Of a stretch of DNA of 37,706 nt, positions 1,951-36,912 are shown piece by piece. Below the pieces are notes generated by a model that saw only the letters and a program-made list of their open reading frames with translations, did no database searches and was not told where the DNA came from. The position numbers and the translations under genes are program-made. This stretch comes from Octopus bimaculoides (lineage: Eukaryota), in contig NC_068983.1 in the NCBI RefSeq assembly GCF_001194135.2, positions 70,561,030-70,598,735 of the forward strand, given 5' to 3'. Numbering within the stretch: the stretch's first letter is position 1; every line of letters starts with the position of its first letter.

Positions 1951-2371
1951 ACTCGAAACCTATCTTTTTGATCATATCTAGAGAATTGCATGTGGTGCAT
2001 GAAATTCTGAAACATGCACAGAACTTCATGCACTGCTTGCAATTCTCTGGATATGATCAGAAAGATAGGGTTCGAGTATACAGGGGTGTTAGAAAGAAGT
2101 TAAATTATATTATATGCAATGATGCCAGTGGTACCTGCCCTAGATATAGAAACAAAGACTGGAATAAGGTACAAAGAACTTGTGACAAAGCAAACAGGGT
2201 GAACACGTAGTATAAAAACCAACAAATATCAAGGAGTAATGTTTGTAGAGGCCACAGCCCATGGAGAACTAGCCCGTAGATTTAGGAAAGCTCTGAAGGA
2301 GACCAAACTCAACATTAAGATTGTTGAAAAACCAGGGAACTCCGTCAGATCACAAGTATGTAGGACGTACC
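1951..2371 (+). mobile_element. Penelope-like element remnant (RT C-terminus/linker) with 5' inverted duplication
   Basis: Translation LQFSGYDQKDRVRVY...PRYRNKDW...MFVEATAHGELARRFRKALKETKLNIKIVEKPG matches the PLE pattern QYSGY...PLYRPKEW...FVPATPxGEL...IKVVE. It contains a stop and a frameshift and runs into an N gap. Confidence 0.7.
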
Positions 2372-3208
2372 NNNNNNNNNNNNNNNNNNNNNNNNNNNNN
2401 NNNNNNNNNNNNNNNNNNNNNNNNNNNNNNNNNNNNNNNNNNNNNNNNNNNNNNNNNNNNNNNNNNNNNNNNNNNNNNNNNNNNNNNNNNNNNNNNNNNN
2501 NNNNNNNNNNNNNNNNNNNNNNNNNNNNNNNNNNNNNNNNNNNNNNNNNNNNNNNNNNNNNNNNNNNNNNNNNNNNNNNNNNNNNNNNNNNNNNNNNNNN
2601 NNNNNNNNNNNNNNNNNNNNNNNNNNNNNNNNNNNNNNNNNNNNNNNNNNNNNNNNNNNNNNNNNNNNNNNNNNNNNNNNNNNNNNNNNNNNNNNNNNNN
2701 NNNNNNNNNNNNNNNNNNNNNNNNNNNNNNNNNNNNNNNNNNNNNNNNNNNNNNNNNNNNNNNNNNNNNNNNNNNNNNNNNNNNNNNNNNNNNNNNNNNN
2801 NNNNNNNNNNNNNNNNNNNNNNNNNNNNNNNNNNNNNNNNNNNNNNNNNNNNNNNNNNNNNNNNNNNNNNNNNNNNNNNNNNNNNNNNNNNNNNNNNNNN
2901 NNNNNNNNNNNNNNNNNNNNNNNNNNNNNNNNNNNNNNNNNNNNNNNNNNNNNNNNNNNNNNNNNNNNNNNNNNNNNNNNNNNNNNNNNNNNNNNNNNNN
3001 NNNNNNNNNNNNNNNNNNNNNNNNNNNNNNNNNNNNNNNNNNNNNNNNNNNNNNNNNNNNNNNNNNNNNNNNNNNNNNNNNNNNNNNNNNNNNNNNNNNN
3101 NNNNNNNNNNNNNNNNNNNNNNNNNNNNNNNNNNNNNNNNNNNNNNNNNNNNNNNNNNNNNNNNNNNNNNNNNNNNNNNNNNNNNNNNNNNNNNNNNNNN
3201 NNNNNNNN
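2372..3208. other. Assembly gap
   Basis: N run. Confidence 1.
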
Positions 3209-3261
<53 letters not shown>

Positions 3262-3965: not shown

Positions 3966-4005
<40 letters not shown>

Positions 4006-4591
4006 NNNNNNNNNNNNNNNNNNNNNNNNNNNNNNNNNNNNNNNNNNNNNNNNNNNNNNNNNNNNNNNNNNNNNNNNNNNNNNNNNNNNNNNNNNNNNNN
4101 NNNNNNNNNNNNNNNNNNNNNNNNNNNNNNNNNNNNNNNNNNNNNNNNNNNNNNNNNNNNNNNNNNNNNNNNNNNNNNNNNNNNNNNNNNNNNNNNNNNN
4201 NNNNNNNNNNNNNNNNNNNNNNNNNNNNNNNNNNNNNNNNNNNNNNNNNNNNNNNNNNNNNNNNNNNNNNNNNNNNNNNNNNNNNNNNNNNNNNNNNNNN
4301 NNNNNNNNNNNNNNNNNNNNNNNNNNNNNNNNNNNNNNNNNNNNNNNNNNNNNNNNNNNNNNNNNNNNNNNNNNNNNNNNNNNNNNNNNNNNNNNNNNNN
4401 NNNNNNNNNNNNNNNNNNNNNNNNNNNNNNNNNNNNNNNNNNNNNNNNNNNNNNNNNNNNNNNNNNNNNNNNNNNNNNNNNNNNNNNNNNNNNNNNNNNN
4501 NNNNNNNNNNNNNNNNNNNNNNNNNNNNNNNNNNNNNNNNNNNNNNNNNNNNNNNNNNNNNNNNNNNNNNNNNNNNNNNNNNNNNNNNNNN
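4006..4591. other. Assembly gap
   Basis: N run. Confidence 1.
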
Positions 4592-4768: not shown

Positions 4769-6477
4769 GGGCAAGCGAGTAAGTTCAGGGGTTTAAACTA
4801 CCTGAAATATCACAATAAACATGCGCCGAAATCGGGGCAATAAACGAAAAAAGGTTTTTAATGTGTTCTCAGAGTATATAGAACTTAGGAGGAAATACCG
4901 ATAAGGTATGTATACCAAAATCGTGAAGTACGTTACGTAATAACCGGCTAATCGGATATGAGATAATAACAATCCAAAGTAAATAACTCTGAAAAGGGTT
5001 TTTGTGCATTCCCGGAGAATATAACCTTTAGGAGCGCTAGTGTTGAAATAGATTTACTATGAATGTAGAAACAGACTGACATTTAGTTTTACAGTAGTCA
5101 TACAAATAAATAAAGTATATAGATTTAAAAATAAAATAACATGTGGATTAAAAATACATTTACGACACATGCAAATATTACAGTTAAATAATAAATACCT
5201 GATGATTTGTCTTTCCTTGTGGGGCATAAATAAACAAATGATTAGGATTGCCGACTCTTGAACATCCCGCATAAAGTTGGCCATGGGAGAAAACTGGTTC
5301 CGCAAGGTTCAGACCTACCACATCGAAGGACTGCCCCTGGGCCTTGTTAATGCTCATTGCAAAGCTAAGTTTCAATGGGAATTGCAGGCGCTTGTACTGG
5401 AAAGACATATCCGAGGGAATAAGTGGAATTCTAGGAATGAATACAAGCTCACCGCTTGTTTTACCAGTCAAAATTGTTGTCACTAAGACTGTTAGCACCA
5501 TCTTCTATATTATAAGTCGTGTGCCATTGCAAAGCTTTGGTGGATAGAGGTTTCGAAGCAGCATAACTGGTGCCCCAATCTTGAGGTGTAAGTTGTGAGG
5601 TGGGAGGCCGGGTGGTATTAGATTATTCAAAACATTCAACTGGATAATTCACAGCTTCATCGACGTTGAGTACAGTGTCCATGGAATTGTAAATGTGACA
5701 CTCACCTGGCAACTGTTCCAGAAGTTTGATGTTGAAATCATCAACTGCCACATTCTTTGGAGCTAAAATAGCACGGGTTTTCAGCCAGTTGTGGTTTGTA
5801 AACTGAGTTCTCAGGCTAGGAAACACCTTATTCATTAGTTCCTTTAAGTCAGATACCATATATTTCAGAACTACGTTTCGAGCATTGTATTTTGTGAAAT
5901 ATACACGCTAGCCATTTTCAAGATGTACAGATAGATTCACCACTGTTGGATACCGCTCGTGGATCTCGAAGTCCTCGTTGGAGGAAATATACATGCCCAA
6001 CTTATATTGCTGAATTTTATCTGCCTGCCTGTCCTTCTGTTCAAGTCCCCAAACCGCCATATCTGAGCTCTTATTGATGTATTTATGTACATATTTAATA
6101 CTTTTTATAGAGTTGCATGACACAATATTAACATGGGCCTCCAATGTTTTAGACAGCAATGAGTTGTAGGGCATGATCCACCTGTTGTCAATTTCCATCC
6201 CTTGGCCACTAACTTTCACCTTGGTAGTGTTTAGGGTGATCAAAGGAAAATATATGGGTTATTTCCCTTGGCTGTTAAAGGAAAATATATTGGTTATATA
6301 TGTGAACCCCTTATAGGGGCGCTAGCCATCAAATTATAGATTTTTATTAAACTTCAATCAGCGTAGTAACAAACTTGATGTTACTTTAACATGTTTGCAA
6401 AGTTTCACGAAAATTCGTTAACGGGTGTAGACGGCAGCTTGACACAAACAGACAACTTGCGTTTATATATGTGTAGA
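4765..6477 (-). mobile_element. Internally deleted Helitron
   Basis: 5' end reads A|TCTACACATATATAAACGC at 6477 on the minus strand; Rep-Hel coding remnants lie inside. The left boundary is approximate because no 3' hairpin-CTAG terminus was found. Confidence 0.8.
5190..6243 (-). pseudogene. Helitron Rep-helicase remnant (PIF1-like helicase C-terminal motifs plus Rep-Hel linker)
   Basis: IDNRWIMPYN...KYVHKYINK...HERYPTVVNLSVHLENG, then [31 protein letters not shown]...[26 protein letters not shown] and [13 protein letters not shown]. Two in-frame TAG stops and one frameshift near 5630. Confidence 0.92.

Positions 6478-11539: not shown

Positions 11540-11600
<61 letters not shown>
11416..11600 (+). 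mobile_element. R4/Dong-type non-LTR retrotransposon, extreme 3' end plus (TAA)n tail (copy A)
   Basis: Encodes KTVLLGRARIHRSVLGI*. The 3' UTR TAAGGTTACTTCTTGTAGCCCGATGTTA is shared with copy B. Ends in (TAA)n at about 11540-11600. Confidence 0.8.
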
Positions 11601-11604
<4 letters not shown>

Positions 11605-11975
11605 GAAAGTGCCAGATAATTGACTTTACAGTCCCAAATGATGAAAAAAATCAATATGAGAGATATAGAAAAAGTAGCAAAGTACCAGGACCTAGCCATT
11701 GAATTACAGAGACTATGGAAAATGCGAGTAAAATGTATTTCAGTAGTTATAGGTGCCTTGAGAACTATCCCTAAAGATGTGAACAGATGGATAGAAGAAA
11801 TAGGCATAAAACCCAGTTTAGTGCGGCTCCAGAAAACAGTGTTATTAGGAACAGCTAGGATACTTAGGAGGGTTCTTGACAACTAAGGTTACTTGTTGTA
11901 GCCCGATGTTAGGATTTTTTTTTTCCCATCTGTTATGTGTATATGAAAATAATGATAGCAACAACAGTAATAATA

Positions 11976-12034
<59 letters not shown>

Positions 12035-12036
12035 GA

Positions 12037-12121
<85 letters not shown>
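11601..12121 (+). mobile_element. R4/Dong-type non-LTR retrotransposon, 5'-truncated: restriction-like endonuclease C-terminus, 3' UTR and (TAA)n/(CTA)n tail (copy B)
   Basis: NRKCQIIDFTVPND(fs)INMRDIEKVAKYQDLAIELQRLW...VVIGAL...LQKTVLLGTARILRRVLDN*, which contains the REL D-x-x-x-P...EK-x-x-KY signature. Confidence 0.88.
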
Positions 12122-12135
12122 CGTTTCTGGTAAAT

Positions 12136-12333
12136 GCACAAGGCCTGAAATTCTGGGAGAGGGTATTAGTCGATTACATCGATCCCAGTGTTCAAATGGG
12201 ACTTATTTTACAGACCCTGAAAAAATGAAAGGCAAAGCTGATCTCTGTGGAATTTGAGCTCAGAACTTAAAGACGGACGAAATGCCGGTGAGCATTTTGT
12301 TCGGTGTCGTTACGATTCTGCCAGTTCGCCACC
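12136..12333 (-). mobile_element. SINE family A
   Basis: Reverse-complement match to 14443-14640 over the full length. Confidence 0.85.
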
Positions 12334-12399
12334 TTAAGAACAACAACAACAACAACAACAGCAGCAACAGCAACCACAACAACAACAACAACAACAGGG

Positions 12400-12965
12400 T
12401 TTTTCTGTCTTCAAGGAAGCCAACGAATACAAAGCAGAGCCTGAATGACAGATATTTATGACGGGAAAAGAAAAGCACGAGAAACCGTGAAAAGGTTAAA
12501 TTCTAAGCTAAAAATGTATCTGTATAGAATATTCTGATAAATCGGTGACAAGAAAAGCTATTACACACCCAATATCTCAAAAAAGTTAAATAGGGTGGAT
12601 ATAGACAAAGGAACTCACTACTTGGCTGCGGAATTGCAGGGCTCAAAGCTAAGACTGAAAGCTTCTTCATTGCATAGCGAGATCGGAACCTCTCCCACCA
12701 GAGACATCCTAAAGTATGTAATGAAACGGAATGCAGTAATAGCTACAGAATACAAGGGTACGTGGAAGAAACAATGAACTGCAATATTTGTTTATTCGGT
12801 TTTAGCCGATAAAAACAAAACAATATTCCTCTAGGCATGACAGAGCTGGGGGTCAAACACACACACTAGGAATTATACCTGCATTATGAAATACCAAAAG
12901 AAAAGAGATAGTAAGGGTACACCAACATTAAAACAACACAGAAACAATATTAAGATCCTAAATGT
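12400..12965 (+). mobile_element. R4/Dong-type remnant, post-RT/zinc-knuckle region (copy C)
   Basis: Degenerate translation SVFKEANEYK...QEKLLHTQY...VDIDKGTH...GLKAKTESFFIA*RDRNL...EETM...RHDRAG...H*ELYLHYEIPKEK. Not captured by the ORF track. Confidence 0.75.
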
Positions 12966-12994
12966 TGAGGATGGCAACGTTGATCAAAACACGA

Positions 12995-13053
12995 ACAACA
13001 ACCAGCACCATCATCATCACCACCACCAACACAACCACCACCATCACCACCAT

Positions 13054-13085
<32 letters not shown>

Positions 13086-13422
13086 TCAATAACATAATTC
13101 ACTTTCACCTCATCAATATCATTTTCTTTATTATATTTACAACCAACATGGCTACTTCCACCACAACTATCATCATCATCATCATCATCACCATCACCAT
13201 CACCATCACCATCATCATCATCATGATCATCATCACCATCACCATCACCATCACCATCATCATCATGATGATCATGATGATGATGATCATCATCATCATG
13301 ATCATCATCATCATGATCAGCACAATCACCATCACCATCATCATCATCATCACCATCACCATCACCATCACCATCCTCCTCCTCCTCCTCCTCCTCCTCA
13401 TCATCATCACCACCACCATCAT

Positions 13423-13497
<75 letters not shown>

Positions 13498-13500
13498 AAA
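12995..13500. repeat. ~500-bp compound trinucleotide tract (CAT/CAC/GAT/CCT/CAG)
   Basis: Direct reading; explains the homopolymer-rich ORFs at 12886-13600. Confidence 0.95.
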
Positions 13501-13707
13501 CAATAAGGATAAAATCAACGAGAAAAAAACAATAACAACAACAGCAACAAATCAAAACAACGGCCTCAATATTATGGCTTTCCTTTTCCTTCGATCCTGA
13601 TAAAATAGTTACGATGACAAGATACAGCTCAGTGGTTTAGGCGACTAACATATTGTATAATTGATGTTGTCTTTATTGGCTTATTTTGCCAGGTCTCCGA
13701 TAGCACT

Positions 13708-13738
<31 letters not shown>

Positions 13739-14442
13739 GCAGCAGCAGCAGCAGCAACACTAATAACAACAATATTAATAACTGAACTGAATAACAGAGA
13801 ATTGACCACGGTTCACTAAAAATAGAGACGCGGAAACGTAGGTCTCTGAAATAAACTAAAATGATTTCAATAACATCAACAAATTCCAAGATCAAATAAA
13901 TAAATAAATAAATAAATAAATACATAAATAAATAAATACATAAATAAATAAATCAAGAGAAAGAAAGAAAACCCAAAAACTTTGCTGTAAGGAATCGGTA
14001 AATACAATTCATAGATATAATCTCTCATACATATTAGCACAGAGAAAATATATTATTTAAATAACAGAACGAACAAATAAGCAACGACATAGGAAACAAG
14101 ACGAACCAACTTGAAGCCAACGTTATTGATAAAAAGCAAACAGAAAAAAAAAACAACAAAAGACAGATTAACTATGTTTTGTTTATAAATCAAACTGCCA
14201 CAAATATCTGTCGGGCCATCATGGAAGACATTTATCGTGGCGAGAGTTTAATTCACGCTTGGTACGAAAGTAACACATTAATTTGTACGTGGTTCAGAAG
14301 CAATGTTCTCTGAGAAAAATTAACTCTCAACAAAAAGTTTGCCTCACACTGATAGCAACCGCTAAAATATATAAAATTAAAGAAGAACGATAAACTAATA
14401 AACAATGCGTAGACGTTTTACATTATTCTTACACATCAGTTA

Positions 14443-21399: not shown

Positions 21400-22151
21400 N
21401 NNNNNNNNNNNNNNNNNNNNNNNNNNNNNNNNNNNNNNNNNNNNNNNNNNNNNNNNNNNNNNNNNNNNNNNNNNNNNNNNNNNNNNNNNNNNNNNNNNNN
21501 NNNNNNNNNNNNNNNNNNNNNNNNNNNNNNNNNNNNNNNNNNNNNNNNNNNNNNNNNNNNNNNNNNNNNNNNNNNNNNNNNNNNNNNNNNNNNNNNNNNN
21601 NNNNNNNNNNNNNNNNNNNNNNNNNNNNNNNNNNNNNNNNNNNNNNNNNNNNNNNNNNNNNNNNNNNNNNNNNNNNNNNNNNNNNNNNNNNNNNNNNNNN
21701 NNNNNNNNNNNNNNNNNNNNNNNNNNNNNNNNNNNNNNNNNNNNNNNNNNNNNNNNNNNNNNNNNNNNNNNNNNNNNNNNNNNNNNNNNNNNNNNNNNNN
21801 NNNNNNNNNNNNNNNNNNNNNNNNNNNNNNNNNNNNNNNNNNNNNNNNNNNNNNNNNNNNNNNNNNNNNNNNNNNNNNNNNNNNNNNNNNNNNNNNNNNN
21901 NNNNNNNNNNNNNNNNNNNNNNNNNNNNNNNNNNNNNNNNNNNNNNNNNNNNNNNNNNNNNNNNNNNNNNNNNNNNNNNNNNNNNNNNNNNNNNNNNNNN
22001 NNNNNNNNNNNNNNNNNNNNNNNNNNNNNNNNNNNNNNNNNNNNNNNNNNNNNNNNNNNNNNNNNNNNNNNNNNNNNNNNNNNNNNNNNNNNNNNNNNNN
22101 NNNNNNNNNNNNNNNNNNNNNNNNNNNNNNNNNNNNNNNNNNNNNNNNNNN
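21400..22151. other. Assembly gap
   Basis: N run. Confidence 1.
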
Positions 22152-26875: not shown

Positions 26876-28119
26876 CCACTACTTTAATGTATTTCTCTTA
26901 TTAAAAGTGCTAATACTTCTGAGTTAACGTAGATGATATTAATCACGTAGGTGATATTAATGAAATGAAATCCTCAGTCTTATTCCACGTATAATGCCTT
27001 TTAAGCCTTGAAATATTCAAAGGTGTCTTACTATAAACGTTCTGATGCTCATGCGATGTGTCTTGCACACGTCAACCTGATACCACTTATCTCTAAGTAA
27101 ACTATTGAGAACGGCTGAGATTTCAGCCAAAAGATATACAATTCATAATAGAAGGAGGTAGAAAGTTGCGTTTATTGCTTCACAAGGTTATTTTAAATGT
27201 AAAAGAGTGAATTATCTCTAATGTTGAAATCTGTCCGCTAAATTCCTTAAGCCAGTTCTAACCTCTAATATAAAAAACACTTGAATTTTCTCAATTTACC
27301 TCTTCAAACAGTCCCTTTCATAAACTTGAAATCAATAGAATAAATGATTGAGCAACTTTATTACTTATATTTTCCAGCTTGAATGCTTCAAAAAAGAGAG
27401 AGCTTCTGATCATCATAGTGTACAACGATCAAAGAGGAATTTCGAATGAACCATAAAGTTGCCTGGGAAATAATAATATGAAACAACATCAAGGTCAAAC
27501 CACAAGCTTATAAGCTTGAAGGCAACTACAGAAAAGAAATACTATTCGACTTAATAGAAGCTCAGTACCAACTGAAGTGTTCATGTTACATGTACTATGA
27601 TTTTCACTGTTTTTGGTGATTCAATCCAGCTAACAGCAAATGGATACCTGTATATAGATAATACATAACTTTGCAAGCTGTAGGCTTACTTAATGAATAT
27701 TTTTGTTAGTTTAAATTACTAAACAAATGCCTCCCTATAATAATAAGTTATAATTAAAATACTCAGACTTCTGATACCAACTTCTATCAAAATTACACGT
27801 GCTATCAACAAGCTGGTATAAATTTTTAATTCTTATAGAATCCCTCCATTGAGACCCACTTATATCGCGTAAAGAACAGATGTTACGTTTTATTTATCTA
27901 TTTATTATTTAAATGTTTTAAAGTAGTTTAGTACTTCAACAGATCCGAATTTATCATTTAAACTAAAACACATAAATTCCGTATTGTCAATTGTCTTCAT
28001 ATCTGAAGATATTAGATATTAGATATTAAATATTAAATAAATCATCTTAATTCAAGGCACTAGAAATACATGCTCTGACTAGAAATACATGCTCTGGGAG
28101 GAAGTGATCAACAGTCATA

Positions 28120-29410
28120 TTGGGTGGCAACTAAGTTCCCGCCGTCTTTTAAAATTTAAAATTTTTAAAAGGTTTAATAAAAAATAACAACGAATTAATC
28201 AATAATGTATTTACTCTTGTTGTTTACAACTTCTTCCCAACGTTCAACAAGATTTTCAATACCTCGTTGGTAGAAATCACCCGATTTCGAAATTGTTCCA
28301 ACCAAGCTTTCAATTCTGCATCAGTATTGAACGAAACTCTGCACATAGTATTTGAAAGAGATCGAAAGAGGTGTAAATCCATTGGTGCCAAATCAGGAGA
28401 GTACGGTGGGTGTGGCAGCACTTCCCAGCCATGCGTTTGAATGGCTTCCTTGGTCATATTGGCGATATGAGGGCGGGCGTTGTCGTGCAGCAGAAGAATT
28501 CCATGCTGCCGATTAGGTCTTTTCTCTTGAATAGCCGTGTTGAGTCGTTCCATCTGTTGAACATCTGTTGAACCACGTTGACCGTTTGGTTCCGTTCAAG
28601 CAATTCGTAATGGATAATCTCTTTCCAGTCCCGCCATACGCACAACATCGTTTTACGTGGATGAAGATCTTGTTTCACGCGCGGTGTCACTTGTTTACCG
28701 GGGCTAAGCCATTCCTTACGCTGCGTCATATTGATATACAGGCAGCATTTTTAGTCGCCAGTAACGATTCGGTAAAGAAATCGTTACTTGTGTCCACGAG
28801 TTGAGCGGTGACGATCAAGCAAACCAGCGGAGATTGTGGCTCGTTGATTCTTGTTGTTGTCACTTAAAGCATGCGGAACCCATGCTCCATAATTCTGAAC
28901 CTTTCCCATTGAGTGAAAATGCTTCTCTATAGCAGTGTGGGAGCATTCCATTTTCTCTGCCAGTTCTCTTGTCGTTTGACGAGAATTTTCGTGCAAAAGT
29001 TGGTTTAATCACTCTTCATCGAACTCAATTGGACGGCCAGAACGAGGTGCGTCTTTGAGGTCAAAATTTCCATTTTTGAACTTAGCATACCAATCAGGAG
29101 CTGTTGTTTCAGCTATGGCCCCCTCTCGATACTCAGCACAAATGTCGCGAGCAGCTTTTGCGTCCTTAAAACCTTGATTAAAAGCAAAAAGAAGGAGGTG
29201 TCGAAAATGCTCGTTTTTCTTAACTTGACATTCCATTGTAATGATCTGAAAATAAACAAAAATTAACTAAAATTAACTAGAAAAAGAAAATAGATTCCAA
29301 AATGATTCAAAAATAGAATTTTCGAAAAAAATAGATTCCAAAATTTAAAAGCGCAATAAATTCCAAAATAATAATAAAAAAAAATGGCAGGAACTTAGTT
29401 GCCAACCCAA
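28120..29410 (-). mobile_element. Full-length mariner transposon (D,D34D), inactivated
   Basis: TIRs TTGGGT(T)GGCAACTAAGTTCCYGCC at 28120-43 and 29386-410, with TA on both flanks; length 1291 bp. Confidence 0.95.
28224..29236 (-). pseudogene. mariner transposase pseudogene
   Basis: HTH N-terminus, RSGRP, WVPHAL, IVTGD*K, HDNARPH and YSPDLAPMD, with 34 residues between the 2nd and 3rd Asp. Several stops (e.g. 29009, 28784) and frameshifts. Confidence 0.95.
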
Positions 29411-30439
29411 TATTATTCTAGTCAAAATAAACACTTCTCTGGTGCTGTAAAAGATGGTGATGAGACAGCAAATAGCACAGGTACATAGACACGTGCATAT
29501 TTCAATACACTCAGAACTTCTTTCACTGTTTCATGAATTCTTCACTGATAACTCGACATTGCCATTCAAATACACAAATCTGCCTTCAGGTTCAGCAAAT
29601 CTTTCTGCTCACACTTTTCCACACCCATGAACATACACACCAACAGACAGACACAGTATGTACAAACTCACACAGACCTACGTTTACACATACATACATG
29701 CGTGCACACATAAATATACATACACACACTCAGACACACGCACACTAATATGTATGTACAAATATAAACGCAACATAAACACACATACGGACGCTCGTAG
29801 GTACATATATTTATTTATTCACACATATAATCAGATGAATAAATAGTAAATGCGTTATAAATCAGAAGTCTTCATGAGATCAAATAGTTTTTAGTATAGA
29901 TGTTATCATCAAAGAGAAAACTCTTTTCTCCAATACGATACCATTAAACCAGTGAAGAAATGTAAAATACATCCATTATCCTATAATAACATATCATAAC
30001 ATTTTTTTTTTCTATTACCAATTTATTACGTTAGATACGTGTGGGTAGTTTCCGGATTTGTACTTGTAAGGCGTAATGAGTCGCACAGCATCAATTATAT
30101 AGCTAATATGAATTCACCCTATAATTGATGCAGTATGATTTATCATAACTTTAAAGCTTAGGGAATTCTTGGTTAAAACTAGCTTTTGATACTTAAAATG
30201 ATGTTTTTTGTCATTGAAATAGTTCGGGAGAACATGAAATAAAACTAGTCGTCGATTTGACAATCTCCTTATTAATTGGATGCATTAAAAAAATCATTTT
30301 ATTGTTATTGAGTCAGGAGAGGACAGGTAATTCTTGTCTTATTTGGAAATCCCTTGAACTGGTGTGATTCATAGGGTTCAGTACAGATTTGGTTGGTTAA
30401 ACATATTTGAGAAAATGTAAAAGAAAGTTAGGTGATTCT

Positions 30440-30714
30440 CAGTGGGTATGTCTTGCTTGATAATTTCGTAGAGTACATACCTTGTACTAGTGATGAATGT
30501 GGCAGGAAAAATACCAGTGAACAATATGAAAACCCATCTAATCAGTTCGGGAGGTATTAAAAGTCATTTGAACAGCATCGCCATTTTTTAGTTACAGAAG
30601 GAAAATGTATACATTTCGGAAGAAAGCAAGAAACCACTTGTCATACAAGCATTGCTTCTGTACATGCAAGGAAACAATAACAAATGGATGTTTATTTTTG
30701 TGTTCCCCTCTTGC

Positions 30715-30791
<77 letters not shown>

Positions 30792-31140
30792 AACGTCTTT
30801 CGGGCTTAGCTTGAGCTTCTCAGATCGGTGGATATCATCTTTGTTTAACATCCTATCGTCTGGAATCATCTTGTAGCAGAAGTCGGCTTCGTCACTGTTG
30901 TACACAAACCCTTCTCATAGTCACTATATTCTAAGAAGGATTTTAACATAGTCGAATATTCGTTGGAAACGGTACTGTCGTTTGAGCGATTTTCTCCTTG
31001 AACTGATATACTTGCTAAAATGAACTTAAAGAATAGGAATAGAAATCAGGTTTCTGAGCGAGCTTTAGACAATCATTGCGTAACATCGAGGTTGACATTC
31101 TTCAGGTGTTTGAATTTTAGTTTTGCAGTTTTATAAAATA
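30440..31140 (-). mobile_element. pogo/Tigger-type (CENP-B/DDE_1) transposase remnant, interrupted by (GT)n
   Basis: ISVQGE...YNSDEADFCYKMIPD...KLSPKDVIVC matches GE...YNADETGLFYKMLP...K.SKERITV; LVFFLPHSSLVQ matches FLPPNTTSLIQ. Confidence 0.65.
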
Positions 31141-31349
31141 TTATTATGCTTTACGAAGTGACGCTTATAACTTTCCAAATCGAGATTTCTAGCCAGGAAG
31201 CATAAAATCCAGTATACTGTCGATTTCGAGTAAGCTGAGTTTGATCGTTTGTATTCATTGCATTAGAGGAGTAAAGTTTAACTTTCTAAAGAGATTTTTC
31301 ATTGGCTGTTTGTGCCATTTTTATTGCCACCATATATATATATATATAT

Positions 31350-31399
31350 CTGATGCTGAAGAGGAGATAATTACTCCGAAATGTATCTCCTCTTCAGCA
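31350..31399 (+). ncRNA. Second hammerhead ribozyme copy, truncated at the cleavage site and followed by a fold-back
   Basis: 31350-31387 is identical to 32530-32567. After C17 the stem I 3' strand is absent; instead 31384-31399 is the exact reverse complement of 31354-31369. Confidence 0.7.
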
Positions 31400-31415
31400 G
31401 GTCGTATATATATAT

Positions 31416-32194
31416 NNNNNNNNNNNNNNNNNNNNNNNNNNNNNNNNNNNNNNNNNNNNNNNNNNNNNNNNNNNNNNNNNNNNNNNNNNNNNNNNNNNNN
31501 NNNNNNNNNNNNNNNNNNNNNNNNNNNNNNNNNNNNNNNNNNNNNNNNNNNNNNNNNNNNNNNNNNNNNNNNNNNNNNNNNNNNNNNNNNNNNNNNNNNN
31601 NNNNNNNNNNNNNNNNNNNNNNNNNNNNNNNNNNNNNNNNNNNNNNNNNNNNNNNNNNNNNNNNNNNNNNNNNNNNNNNNNNNNNNNNNNNNNNNNNNNN
31701 NNNNNNNNNNNNNNNNNNNNNNNNNNNNNNNNNNNNNNNNNNNNNNNNNNNNNNNNNNNNNNNNNNNNNNNNNNNNNNNNNNNNNNNNNNNNNNNNNNNN
31801 NNNNNNNNNNNNNNNNNNNNNNNNNNNNNNNNNNNNNNNNNNNNNNNNNNNNNNNNNNNNNNNNNNNNNNNNNNNNNNNNNNNNNNNNNNNNNNNNNNNN
31901 NNNNNNNNNNNNNNNNNNNNNNNNNNNNNNNNNNNNNNNNNNNNNNNNNNNNNNNNNNNNNNNNNNNNNNNNNNNNNNNNNNNNNNNNNNNNNNNNNNNN
32001 NNNNNNNNNNNNNNNNNNNNNNNNNNNNNNNNNNNNNNNNNNNNNNNNNNNNNNNNNNNNNNNNNNNNNNNNNNNNNNNNNNNNNNNNNNNNNNNNNNNN
32101 NNNNNNNNNNNNNNNNNNNNNNNNNNNNNNNNNNNNNNNNNNNNNNNNNNNNNNNNNNNNNNNNNNNNNNNNNNNNNNNNNNNNNNNNNNNNNN
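31416..32194. other. Assembly gap (between the two hammerhead copies)
   Basis: N run. Confidence 1.
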
Positions 32195-32215
32195 TATATA
32201 TATATATATAATTTT

Positions 32216-32742
32216 GTAACCTGTTCAAATATACTAGAGGCATATTCGAACCCGTAAGAAGGTCAATCACTGTATTATGTCATGATTTGGTGTATTTACA
32301 CCATTTGTCTACAATGAGAAATTTTTCCCCATGGCAAAATACAGCGAATAGCTTTCTTACAGGTTCGACTATGCCTCAAGCATATTTGAACTGGTAAGAG
32401 GTTTATTCTATAAACACCACAGCCTAGCGCTTCTATTCCGCCGATTAGCGCAGCCAGTCGCAGTACGCTGACTAGAATATAAGAGAGATCTGTCTCAAGT
32501 CAGCCGATAGCGCTTTCTCCTTCCAGTGTCTGATGCTGAAGAGGAGATAATTACTCCGAAATGTATCCATCCGCTAGCCTTGGTAGGGGACATGTCTACA
32601 ACTATTTGTCCACCGCTAAACATTTTCGTCATGACAAAATATAGTTAATGGTTTTCTTACGAATTCGAATATGCCTCAAGTATATTTGAACTGGTAACAA
32701 GTTTATATTTATACACATCACTGCATAGCGCTTCCATTCCGC
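32216..32742 (+). mobile_element. Hammerhead-containing ~300-bp tandem repeat with 5' inverted arm (retrozyme-like or Penelope pseudo-LTR-like)
   Basis: 32303-32441 recurs at 32604-32742 (offset 300-301). 32216-32285 is an inverted copy of the same unit. The ribozyme lies inside the full unit. Confidence 0.6.
32530..32573 (+). ncRNA. Minimal type-I hammerhead ribozyme motif (complete copy)
   Basis: Stem I 5' strand CTGATG (32530-35); core CTGAAGA (32536-42); stem II GGAG-ataatta-CTCC (32543-57); GAAA (32558-61); minimal stem III AT-gt-AT; cleavage triplet ATC with C17 at 32567; stem I 3' strand CATCcG (32568-73), pairing 5 of 6 positions. Confidence 0.8.
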
Positions 32743-33087
32743 GTATATATATACATGTTTGTATGTACATACCTGCACCTACAAAATTTTTTTAGTACAT
32801 CTAAGTGATCTATTTAACACTGACCAGGATCAGGATGAATCAGCTAGTCACTGCATCGCTTTAAACCTTCCTATATTCACAATTGAGACGTTACACTACA
32901 AATGTATTGTATTCTGATTGCTTTGAAATTGACATGCCATTAGTACACCTTTACATTTCCCCGCAGCTCACGCGCACTCTCACGGGCTCGTTGCTGATTA
33001 ATTTTACAGCTTTCCTATTGCCTACAGCAATATTATACTCTAGAATGTGGTACATAACCACAGCTAAAAGGCATATATTATTTGCTT

Positions 33088-36373: not shown

Positions 36374-36546
36374 GTTTGTGTGTGTATGTGTGTGTGTGAG
36401 GGCACGGGAGAGGAAGAATTGATTATTTTTCTGAAGAAAACATTTTTGCGTTAATAACAGCTTTCTACAATAAAGCTTTTAGCCCTAATCAATCCTATAA
36501 CGAAAAAATTAAAGACAAATATGCCGCCCGCCCTACGACATACGTT

Positions 36547-36912
36547 NNNNNNNNNNNNNNNNNNNNNNNNNNNNNNNNNNNNNNNNNNNNNNNNNNNNNN
36601 NNNNNNNNNNNNNNNNNNNNNNNNNNNNNNNNNNNNNNNNNNNNNNNNNNNNNNNNNNNNNNNNNNNNNNNNNNNNNNNNNNNNNNNNNNNNNNNNNNNN
36701 NNNNNNNNNNNNNNNNNNNNNNNNNNNNNNNNNNNNNNNNNNNNNNNNNNNNNNNNNNNNNNNNNNNNNNNNNNNNNNNNNNNNNNNNNNNNNNNNNNNN
36801 NNNNNNNNNNNNNNNNNNNNNNNNNNNNNNNNNNNNNNNNNNNNNNNNNNNNNNNNNNNNNNNNNNNNNNNNNNNNNNNNNNNNNNNNNNNNNNNNNNNN
36901 NNNNNNNNNNNN
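36547..36912. other. Assembly gap
   Basis: N run. Confidence 1.

What the first reader, a model, noticed from the sequence alone, without database searches (positions are those of the whole stretch)
32530..32573. Intact-looking minimal type-I hammerhead ribozyme in intergenic DNA
Seen: ctgatg-CTGAAGA-ggag(ataatta)ctcc-GAAA-t-gt-a-TC-catccg. All conserved core nucleotides are present (C3-U4-G5-A6-N7-G8-A9, G10.1:C11.1, G12-A13-A14-A15.1, U16.1-C17), and stem I pairs 5 of 6. Established: minimal type-I hammerheads with a near-absent stem III occur in Penelope-like element pseudo-LTRs and metazoan retrozymes, and cleave efficiently as dimers through a self-complementary stem III. Here ATGTAT can self-pair in a dimer using two G-U wobbles. 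Inference: a self-cleaving RNA is or was made from this locus, with cleavage after 32567 (AUC). I cannot tell whether this family has already been described in cephalopods.
Basis: partly seen in the sequence, partly recalled or inferred. Interest (0 to 1): 0.85.

Follow-up and report, generated by a model that had tools for sequence, protein, structure and literature searches.

The report
Hammerhead ribozyme motif in octopus retroelement
The hammerhead ribozyme motif is really there with a complete catalytic core, but it sits in an old, decayed copy of a short Penelope-like/retrozyme-type repeat in what is very probably the Octopus bimaculoides genome, so it is an ordinary new example of a well-known class and probably a weak or dead ribozyme.

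Summary
The motif at 32530-32573 (+) is exactly as described. It has the full hammerhead core, a 4-bp helix II with G10.1:C11.1, helix I pairing 5 of 6, a 1-2 bp helix III, and a predicted cut between 32567 and 32568. A descriptor of that stringency is expected 9e-5 times per window, or about 7 times per 2.7-Gb genome.

Context argues for descent from a real ribozyme family:
- The motif lies in a ~300-bp unit present as a 1.5-unit partial tandem (A-B-A').
- An inverted truncated copy precedes the tandem.
- The whole insertion is embedded in a (TA)n microsatellite.
- GC is 42%, and the ribozyme is on the strand I infer to be the sense strand.
This is the published architecture of Penelope-like-element and non-LTR retrozyme insertions.

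A second, 39-nt identical copy at 31349-31387 folds back on itself and abuts an assembly gap.

Evidence against present activity:
- Rfam gives no match, even at E<=10.
- The repeat arms are only 78% identical, so the insertion is old.
- The AUGUAU helix-III self-duplex is predicted unstable (+0.6 kcal/mol).
- A misfold that buries C3 and C17 is 5 kcal/mol more stable than the active fold.

I could reach no paralogues, so covariation is untested.

Verdict: a new member of a known kind, of modest interest.

The parts
32530..32573 (+). Type-I hammerhead motif: helix I 5' strand 32530-32535, core CUGAAGA 32536-32542, helix II 32543-32546/32554-32557 with loop 32547-32553, GAAA 32558-32561, helix III/loop 32561-32566, C17 32567, helix I 3' strand 32568-32573. 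Predicted cut between 32567 and 32568.
32442..32599 (+). Part B of the ~300-bp unit. It is present once and carries the hammerhead.
32300..32441 (+). Part A of the unit, first direct copy. It runs straight into B.
   Evidence: (D2, D6), (78% identical to A')
32600..32742 (+). Part A', second direct copy 300 bp downstream. It ends the insertion at 32742, directly before a TA-rich run.
32211..32299 (-). Inverted, 5'-truncated copy of part A, head-to-head with the direct copy. Its outer end runs into (TA)n and then the assembly gap, so the left boundary is unresolved.
   Evidence: (I5, I6)
32655..32700 (+). Hairpin conserved in all three copies of A (also 32354-32399 on + and about 32214-32258 on -). 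It starts 88 nt downstream of the cut site. I infer it is a candidate reverse-transcriptase recognition or start structure.
   Evidence: 24 pairs, no compensatory change with n=3; analogy to PMC11167929
31349..31387 (+). Second copy of the hammerhead from position 2.7 to C17, 39/39 identical to 32529-32567. It lacks the helix I 3' strand.
   Evidence: (D4)
31384..31405 (+). Fold-back arm TATCTCCTCTTCAGCAGGTCG. Its first 16 nt are the exact reverse complement of 31354-31369. It shares a 4-nt microhomology (TATC) with the end of copy 2.
   Evidence: (I7), (16-bp hairpin, -36.3 kcal/mol, z -8.2)
31417..32194 (.). Assembly gap (778 N) between the two copies. It may hide further units.
31333..31348 (.). 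(TA)n run flanking the insertions. Further runs lie at 31406-31416, 32195-32210 and 32743-32754.

Best explanation
The motif is a hammerhead ribozyme by descent. It belongs to an old, decayed insertion of a short (~300-nt unit) non-autonomous retroelement of the Penelope-like-element / non-LTR retrozyme kind in the Octopus bimaculoides genome. I infer the following for active family members. A multimeric or longer-than-unit transcript is cut by the type-I hammerhead after AUC (here 32567/32568). With so short a helix III the ribozyme probably acts as a double hammerhead between neighbouring units. The unit-length RNA, linear or circularised, is then copied into (TA)n microsatellites by a Penelope-type RT/GIY-YIG enzyme supplied in trans. 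Such insertion gives partial tandems with an upstream inverted truncated copy. This particular copy has one complete ribozyme, a wobble-weakened helix III and a competing misfold, so it is most likely weakly active or inactive. Shown: the motif, the repeat architecture, the age of the copy and the energies. Inferred: transcription, cleavage, the mobilising enzyme and circular RNA.
For: The full core and all three helices are present, and this is the only such site in the window. Its chance expectation is 8.7e-5 per window. The motif sits in a 300-bp-period partial tandem A-B-A', preceded by an inverted truncated copy of A (D2/D6/I5/I6). TA runs flank the insertion on the resolved sides. The reconstituted unit has 42% GC. 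This matches PMC8557442, which describes partial tandems, an inverted 5'-truncated copy upstream, microsatellite targets and short-read assembly problems. It also matches PMC7229834, which describes ~300-bp tandem units with GC below 45% carrying type-I hammerheads, about 5000 of them in a mussel. The ribozyme is on the strand expected to be sense if the inverted copy is the upstream one. The helix dimensions (6/4/1-2 bp) are those of classical metazoan type-I motifs. A conserved hairpin begins 88 nt downstream of the cut site. In the anole element the RT start sites lie about 85-92 nt downstream of the cut site, in a stem-loop. The ribozyme segment recurs at 100% identity 1.18 kb upstream. 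The host is O. bimaculoides: a 100% protein match and 82-86% nucleotide identity of a shared Helitron to GCA_001194135.2. Penelope elements are abundant in octopus genomes, with an expansion at JC distance about 0.2. That distance fits the 78% identity of A and A'.
Against: No Rfam hammerhead model matches, even at E<=10 on 81 nt. No paralogue or orthologue could be retrieved, so core conservation and compensatory changes are untested. Only one complete ribozyme is present in resolved sequence. The active fold is disfavoured thermodynamically: -4.1 against -9.1 kcal/mol for the monomer, -6.2 against -26.2 for the dimer, and +0.6 for the AUGUAU duplex. The 301-nt unit is not unusually structured (z -0.83). 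At ~10% divergence per copy, an intact 13-nt core is expected about 25% of the time without selection, so intactness proves little. No RT or GIY-YIG coding sequence lies in the window. The left boundary and any 'tail' asymmetry are hidden by the gap. (TA)n is very common in this window, so that flank is weak evidence.
Confidence: 0.7

Rival explanations
1. Chance look-alike: an unrelated interspersed or tandem repeat that happens to spell a hammerhead core with pairable flanks. No ribozyme was ever involved.
For: About 7 such sites are expected by chance in a 2.7-Gb genome, and the first stage may have screened many windows. Rfam models do not recognise the motif. The active fold is not the predicted fold. 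No family evidence is available.
Against: The expectation for this window is 8.7e-5. The motif lies in the repeat architecture, unit size, GC content and strand that are published for hammerhead-bearing elements. The ribozyme segment is the only part of the unit that recurs nearby.
Confidence: 0.15
2. Currently active locus: this very copy is transcribed and self-cleaves, possibly with copy 2 acting in trans as the enzyme half of a double hammerhead. It would yield RNAs with a 5'-OH at 32568.
For: Every core position and G10.1:C11.1 are intact. Four contiguous helix I pairs adjoin the core. In a double hammerhead, copy 2 could supply the helix I 5' strand, the core, helix II and half of helix III (inference).
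Against: The insertion is old. Helix III dimerisation is predicted unstable and the misfold dominates. Copy 2 is locked in a 16-bp hairpin that sequesters its own core. There is no evidence of transcription. Even PLE min-HHRs with intact cores cleave poorly in vitro.
Confidence: 0.1
3. Copy 2 (31349-31405) is not a real genomic feature. It would be a short-read assembly or gap-closing artefact built from reads of the 32530 locus or of other family members.
For: It is 100% identical over 39 nt while the repeat arms around copy 1 are only 78% identical. It sits 11 nt from a 778-N gap, between TA runs. PMC8557442 notes that such insertions often break short-read assemblies.
Against: It is a coherent structure with a 4-nt microhomology junction (GATA/TATC) typical of a real fold-back or template switch. 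Its right arm differs from copy 1 beyond the 16-bp stem (CGACC against TCTGA), which suggests another source copy. This question does not affect the main finding.
Confidence: 0.35

Closest known systems
Non-LTR retrozymes of animals (Cervera & de la Pena 2020, PMC7229834), e.g. Mytilus galloprovincialis 350-390-bp repeats and axolotl Rtz_331 with HHR_Amex1
   Same: A type-I hammerhead inside a ~300-bp low-GC unit arranged in tandem. Helix III is a single base pair capped by a tetraloop, as in HHR_Amex1 and newt satellite 2. As in the mussel motifs, I recognised no canonical loop1-loop2 contact nucleotides.
   Different: Only 1.5 units and one complete ribozyme are resolved here. The tetraloop UGUA is self-complementary only through two G-U wobbles. 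No circular RNA or expression data exist. An inverted truncated copy is attached.
Penelope-like element insertions and their pLTR hammerheads (Cervera & de la Pena 2014, PMC4209133; Craig et al. 2021, PMC8557442; Frangieh et al. 2024, PMC11167929)
   Same: A partial tandem with an upstream inverted 5'-truncated copy and a microsatellite (TA)n target. The ribozyme is on the sense strand, roughly 90-170 nt upstream of the element's 3' end, with a stem-loop near that end.
   Different: There is no RT/GIY-YIG ORF, so the element is non-autonomous. The ribozyme does not have the PLE 'min-HHR' layout of a 7-8 bp helix II, a bulged base after A9 and no helix III. The 30-40-bp 'tail' cannot be scored because of the gap. 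Naiads, the clade reported to favour (TA)n, lack canonical hammerheads.
Schistosoma Sm-alpha and newt satellite-2 hammerheads (classical metazoan type I; Rfam Hammerhead_1)
   Same: A 6-bp helix I followed by an internal loop and a possible closing helix (CCAG 32522-32525 with UUGG 32580-32583, by eye). A 4-bp helix II with a 6-7-nt loop. A short helix III. Action as double hammerheads in tandem transcripts.
   Different: No Rfam match, even at E<=10. N7 is A. The cleavage triplet is AUC rather than GUC. The loop sequences differ.
Animal retrozymes as non-autonomous PLE derivatives (Li, Clavereau & Pollet 2026, bioRxiv 10.64898/2026.07.22.740005)
   Same: A retrozyme-sized unit that shows PLE-type insertion features is what that hypothesis predicts.
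   Different: That study covers vertebrates only. Sequence similarity between this unit and an octopus Penelope pLTR was not testable here.

Membership tests
Hammerhead ribozyme, type I | Conserved core C3 U4 G5 A6 N7 G8 A9, G12 A13 A14, A15.1:U16.1, H17 | tested here: met
   All positions are present at 32536-32542, 32558-32561 and 32566-32567.
Hammerhead ribozyme, type I | Three helices around the core, with helix I open-ended and G10.1:C11.1 closing helix II | tested here: met
   Helix I pairs 5/6, with four contiguous pairs at the core. Helix II is 4 bp (GGAG/CUCC). Helix III is 1 bp plus a tetraloop, or 2 bp plus a 2-nt loop, within the range stated for metazoan type I in PMC4209133.
Hammerhead ribozyme, type I | Match to the curated covariance models (Rfam Hammerhead_1 and clan) | tested here: not met
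   No match at gathering score, nor at E<=10 on 301 nt and on 81 nt.
Hammerhead ribozyme, type I | The active fold is thermodynamically accessible, as a monomer or a double hammerhead | tested here: inconclusive
   Monomer: -4.1 for the active fold against an MFE of -9.1. Dimer: -6.2 against -26.2. AUGUAU self-duplex: +0.6 kcal/mol. Nearest-neighbour models ignore tertiary contacts and co-transcriptional folding.
Hammerhead ribozyme, type I | Core conservation and compensatory changes among family members | not testable with these tools
   No cephalopod DNA collection can be searched by sequence. The only other copy is 39/39 identical. All external searches were empty.
Hammerhead ribozyme, type I | Site-specific self-cleavage giving 2',3'-cyclic phosphate and 5'-OH ends | not testable with these tools
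   This needs in vitro transcription or RNA end mapping.
Non-LTR retrozyme (animal) | Tandem repeats of a 150-450-bp unit, each unit with a type-I hammerhead | tested here: inconclusive
   The period is 300 bp, but only 1.5 units and one complete ribozyme are resolved. A second, partial ribozyme lies 1180 bp upstream, across a 778-N gap.
Non-LTR retrozyme (animal) | Low GC content (below 45-50%) | tested here: met
   The reconstituted unit has 41.9% GC.
Non-LTR retrozyme (animal) | Expression as unit-length circular RNA | not testable with these tools
   No transcriptome access. The predicted unit fold is not unusually stable (z -0.83).
Penelope-like element insertion (non-autonomous derivative) | Partial tandem (pseudo-LTR) with an inverted 5'-truncated copy upstream | tested here: met
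   A-B-A' is direct. The inverted copy of A at 32211-32299 lies head-to-head with it (I5/I6).
Penelope-like element insertion (non-autonomous derivative) | Insertion into a microsatellite, and a 30-40-bp tail at one end only | tested here: inconclusive
   TA runs flank both insertions, but (TA)n is frequent in this window. The left end runs into the gap, so the tail cannot be scored.
Penelope-like element insertion (non-autonomous derivative) | Sequence relationship to the pLTR of an autonomous PLE of the same genome | not testable with these tools
   There is no RT/GIY-YIG in the window, and octopus PLE loci could not be fetched. The literature shows that Penelope is abundant in octopus.
PLE 'min-HHR' (Cervera & de la Pena 2014) | Helix II of 7-8 bp, an unpaired base between A9 and 10.1, helix I of 4-5 bp, and no helix III/loop 3 | tested here: not met
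   Helix II is 4 bp, there is no bulged base, and a 4-nt loop 3 is present.

The most novel reading that the evidence does not exclude
Copy 2 would be a genomic fossil of ribozyme action. Its identity to the ribozyme starts at the 5' end of helix I and stops at C17, the predicted scissile bond. There the sequence folds back on itself through a GAUA/UAUC microhomology. That would be a retro-copied, snapped-back 3' end of a self-cleaved RNA. It would be in-genome evidence that the hammerhead cuts in vivo and that cleaved RNA enters reverse transcription, a step not seen for the anole Penelope element in vitro or in RNA-seq (PMC11167929).
Probability: 0.1. Interest if true: 0.55.

Novelty: new member of a known kind. 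Interest (0 to 1): 0.3.

Why it matters
Hammerhead ribozymes in Penelope-like elements and retrozymes are already known from cnidarians to amphibians, including a bivalve mollusc, so one in an octopus is expected rather than surprising. It still has some value. No paper in the searchable library describes hammerheads or retrozymes in cephalopods. This locus also combines a retrozyme-sized unit with Penelope-type insertion hallmarks, which fits the recent proposal that animal retrozymes are non-autonomous Penelope derivatives. A genome-wide follow-up would show whether octopus genomes carry an expressed circular-RNA-producing family.

Tried and rejected
1. Rfam: whole window at gathering score, then 301 nt and 81 nt at E<=10. 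No match.
2. Exact look-ups of three window ORFs in the assembly index: not on record.
3. Exact-pattern scans for the family-specific ribozyme in metagenome and viral contigs: no hits.
4. A degenerate ribozyme pattern gave three metagenome loci, about the chance number. None is related: L003 has no helix I, and L004 and L005 are identical compost contigs. Viral contigs gave none.
5. A protein search with a 475-aa concatenation of six-frame pieces of the element, hoping for spurious ORFs called on paralogues: no hit at E<=1.
6. Random same-species DNA fetched through neighbouring transposon proteins. The mariner hits (L001, L002, L006, L007) share only the mariner with the window. The Pif1/Helitron hit gave L008 from O. 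bimaculoides. None contains the element or a hammerhead.
7. tRNA/SINE origin of the unit: no tRNA found.
8. A Penelope ORF in the window: no RT or GIY-YIG motif, and Pfam finds only a mariner and a weak helicase hit.
9. A rod-like or unusually stable unit RNA: z -0.83.
10. I first read the 40 nt at 32703-32742 as a one-sided PLE 'tail'. I withdrew this because the inverted arm runs into TA-rich sequence and then the gap.
11. I first read the end of copy 2 at C17 as exact. It actually lies within a 4-nt microhomology (TATC), so a fold-back template switch explains it without RNA cleavage. A 2',3'-cyclic phosphate would also block self-priming.

Full report
**Observation**

The sequence at 32530-32573 (+) reads ctgatg CTGAAGA ggag ataatta ctcc GAAA tgta TC catccg. 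In hammerhead numbering:
- C3-A9 is 32536-32542.
- G10.1:C11.1 is 32543:32557, closing a 4-bp helix II (GGAG/CUCC) with a 7-nt loop.
- G12-A14 is 32558-32560.
- A15.1:U16.1 is 32561:32566, enclosing UGUA.
- C17 is 32567, and helix I pairs 5 of 6 (U2.5/C1.5 mismatch).

The predicted cut lies between 32567 and 32568.

**Is it more than chance?**

I wrote a descriptor at the quality of the observed motif. It finds this single site on both strands of the window. A relaxed version adds only artefactual readings of the same two loci. Importance sampling under a first-order Markov model of the window gives 1.26e-9 matches per base-strand. That is 8.7e-5 per window and about 7 per 2.7-Gb genome. The motif alone is therefore highly unusual for one window. 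It is not decisive if a whole genome was screened, so context has to carry the argument.

**Negative database evidence**

No Rfam family matches, at gathering score on the whole window or at E<=10 on 301 nt and on 81 nt around the motif. This is real evidence that the motif is not close in sequence to curated hammerheads. However, short-helix-III animal variants were originally found with structure descriptors rather than with such models.

**Context: repeat structure**

- Unit. The motif lies in part B (32442-32599) of a unit. Part A occurs twice in direct orientation 300 bp apart: A at 32300-32441 and A' at 32600-32742, 78% identical, with many CpG-to-TpG differences.
- Inverted copy. Part A also occurs once inverted and truncated at 32211-32299, head-to-head with A (D2/D6/I5/I6).
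- Right boundary. The insertion ends at 32742, directly before a TA-rich run.
- Left boundary. On the left it runs into (TA)n at 32195-32210 and then a 778-N assembly gap.
- Composition. The reconstituted 301-nt unit has 42% GC.
- Other content. There is no tRNA-like part, no RT or GIY-YIG coding sequence in the window, and no further copy of the unit in the window.

**Context: fit with published elements**

This is the published picture of Penelope-like-element insertions: partial tandems forming pseudo-LTRs, an inverted 5'-truncated copy next to the upstream repeat, a microsatellite target, and trouble for short-read assemblies (PMC8557442). It is also the picture of animal non-LTR retrozymes: ~300-bp low-GC tandem units carrying type-I hammerheads, with about 5000 copies in a mussel (PMC7229834). 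A 2026 preprint argues that the two are the same thing.

If the inverted copy marks the upstream side, the sense strand is +, and the ribozyme is on +.

A hairpin conserved in all three copies of A begins 88 nt downstream of the cut site. In the anole Penelope element the reverse-transcription start sites lie in a stem-loop about 85-92 nt downstream of the hammerhead cut site (PMC11167929). I offer that parallel as inference only. With three sequences there is no compensatory change.

**Host**

A Pif1/Helitron-like ORF of the window has a 100% identical database protein. Its next relatives are Octopus bimaculoides proteins. A 20-kb piece of O. bimaculoides chromosome CM046609.1 shares that Helitron at 82-86% nucleotide identity and has the same GC content and gap style. 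Penelope elements are abundant in octopus genomes, with an expansion at Jukes-Cantor distance about 0.2. That distance is compatible with the divergence of A and A'.

**Second copy**

Positions 31349-31387 are 39/39 identical to 32529-32567 (D4). This segment runs from one base before helix I through C17. The sequence then continues TCCTCTTCAGCAGGTCG, which is the reverse complement of the motif's own 5' half. The result is a perfect 16-bp hairpin between TA runs, 11 nt from the gap (-36.3 kcal/mol, z -8.2).

The switch lies within a 4-nt microhomology (TATC, complementary to GATA in helix II/loop 2). A fold-back template switch therefore explains its position without invoking RNA cleavage. 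A cleaved RNA end would also carry a 2',3'-cyclic phosphate that blocks self-priming.

Beyond the 16-bp stem the right arm differs from copy 1 (CGACC against TCTGA), which hints at another source copy. The 100% identity contrasts with the 78% identity of A and A'. That points to a recent event, gene conversion or an assembly artefact, and I cannot decide among these. Copy 2 cannot cleave in cis, because it lacks the helix I 3' strand and its core is locked in the hairpin.

**Is this copy likely to work?**

The architecture (helix I 6 bp, helix II 4 bp, helix III 1-2 bp with a small loop) is the classical metazoan type-I layout. It is not the PLE 'min-HHR' layout. Such ribozymes act as double hammerheads through a palindromic helix III.

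Here the hexamer AUGUAU self-pairs only through two G-U wobbles:

| Structure | Predicted energy (kcal/mol) |
|---|---|
| AUGUAU self-duplex | +0.6 |
| AUGCAU self-duplex (one transition away) | -4.7 |
| Double hammerhead | -6.2 |
| Dimer MFE | -26.2 |
| Monomer, active fold | -4.1 |
| Monomer, misfold GAUGC(32532-32536):GUAUC(32563-32567), burying C3 and C17 | -9.1 |

These models ignore tertiary contacts and co-transcriptional folding, so they lower the odds of activity without excluding it. At roughly 10% divergence per copy, an intact 13-nt core would survive about a quarter of the time by luck. Intactness is therefore not evidence of selection.

**Search for relatives**

All of the following were empty or uninformative:
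- exact ORF look-ups;
- family-specific and degenerate DNA patterns in metagenome and viral collections;
- a protein search with concatenated six-frame pieces of the element;
- about 90 kb of eukaryotic DNA fetched through neighbouring transposon proteins, including 20 kb of O. bimaculoides.

The decisive test, conservation of the core and covariation of the helices across paralogues, could therefore not be run.

**Literature**

Full-text searches for hammerhead or retrozyme together with octopus, cephalopod, squid and related terms found no description of such ribozymes in cephalopods. The only paper joining the terms is Craig et al. 2021. It reports that cephalopod Naiad elements are ancient remnants and that Naiads lack canonical hammerheads.

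**Verdict**

The motif is most likely a genuine hammerhead by descent (about 0.7), carried by an old, non-autonomous Penelope-type/retrozyme-type insertion in a (TA)n microsatellite of O. bimaculoides. It is more likely a weak or dead copy than a working ribozyme gene. A chance look-alike remains possible (about 0.15). It is a new member of a known kind, of modest interest. The most novel reading not excluded is that copy 2 records an in vivo cleaved RNA end (about 0.1).

Noticed in passing
window 28117-29412 (-): Frameshifted mariner/Mos1 transposase remnant (Pfam Transposase_1 and DDE_3). It is 91% identical in DNA over 451 bp to a TARA Oceans metagenome scaffold (L001), and 76-77% identical to Mb-scale eukaryotic contigs in ENA 'metagenome' assemblies (L002, L006, L007).
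   Followed up: partly
window 4882-6475 (-): Helitron-type Pif1-like helicase remnant. The ORF at 5184-5501 has a 100% identical database protein, and its closest named relatives are from Octopus bimaculoides. It is 82-86% identical in DNA to O. bimaculoides chromosome CM046609.1 (L008). This identifies the host species.
   Followed up: yes
window 32543-32557: Helix II plus loop 2 (GGAGAUAAUUACUCC) is nearly self-complementary, with UAAUUA a perfect palindrome. Cofolding therefore predicts an intermolecular helix II duplex between two copies, a second possible dimer contact or misfold.
   Followed up: partly
window 32424-32441, 32507-32525, 32725-32742: A short sub-repeat, TAGCGCTT(C/T)..TTCC, occurs three times in the unit: at the end of A, at the end of A', and immediately upstream of the hammerhead. 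CCGAT(T)AGCGC occurs at 32441 and 32503. Its meaning is unknown.
   Followed up: no
window 2370-3210, 4005-4590, 21400-22150, 31417-32194, 36545-36910 (approximate): Five runs of N, each bordered by di- or tetranucleotide microsatellites. The assembly breaks at microsatellites, so sequence next to gaps, including hammerhead copy 2, deserves caution.
   Followed up: no
window 11540-13760: A 2-kb block of long trinucleotide microsatellites (AAT, TAA, AAC, ACC, ATC about 91 copies, CAG, AGC) produces long spurious low-complexity ORFs on both strands.
   Followed up: no
L004 4619-4672 (+) and L005 2358-2411 (-): Two contigs, one labelled as a compost metagenome, carry an identical hammerhead-like core (CTGAAGA GGAG gggcgg CTCC GAAA tagt TC). 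They also have an 8-bp distal pairing CCGGTTTC/GAAACTGG, offset from the core by 1 and 4 nt. This could be an unrelated microbial hammerhead variant or chance.
   Followed up: no
window 30588-30905 (-): A 105-aa ORF just upstream of hammerhead copy 2 contains NSDEADFCYKMIPDDRML, which resembles a DDE transposase (pogo/Tigger-like) motif from memory. It has no Pfam match at E<=0.01.
   Followed up: partly
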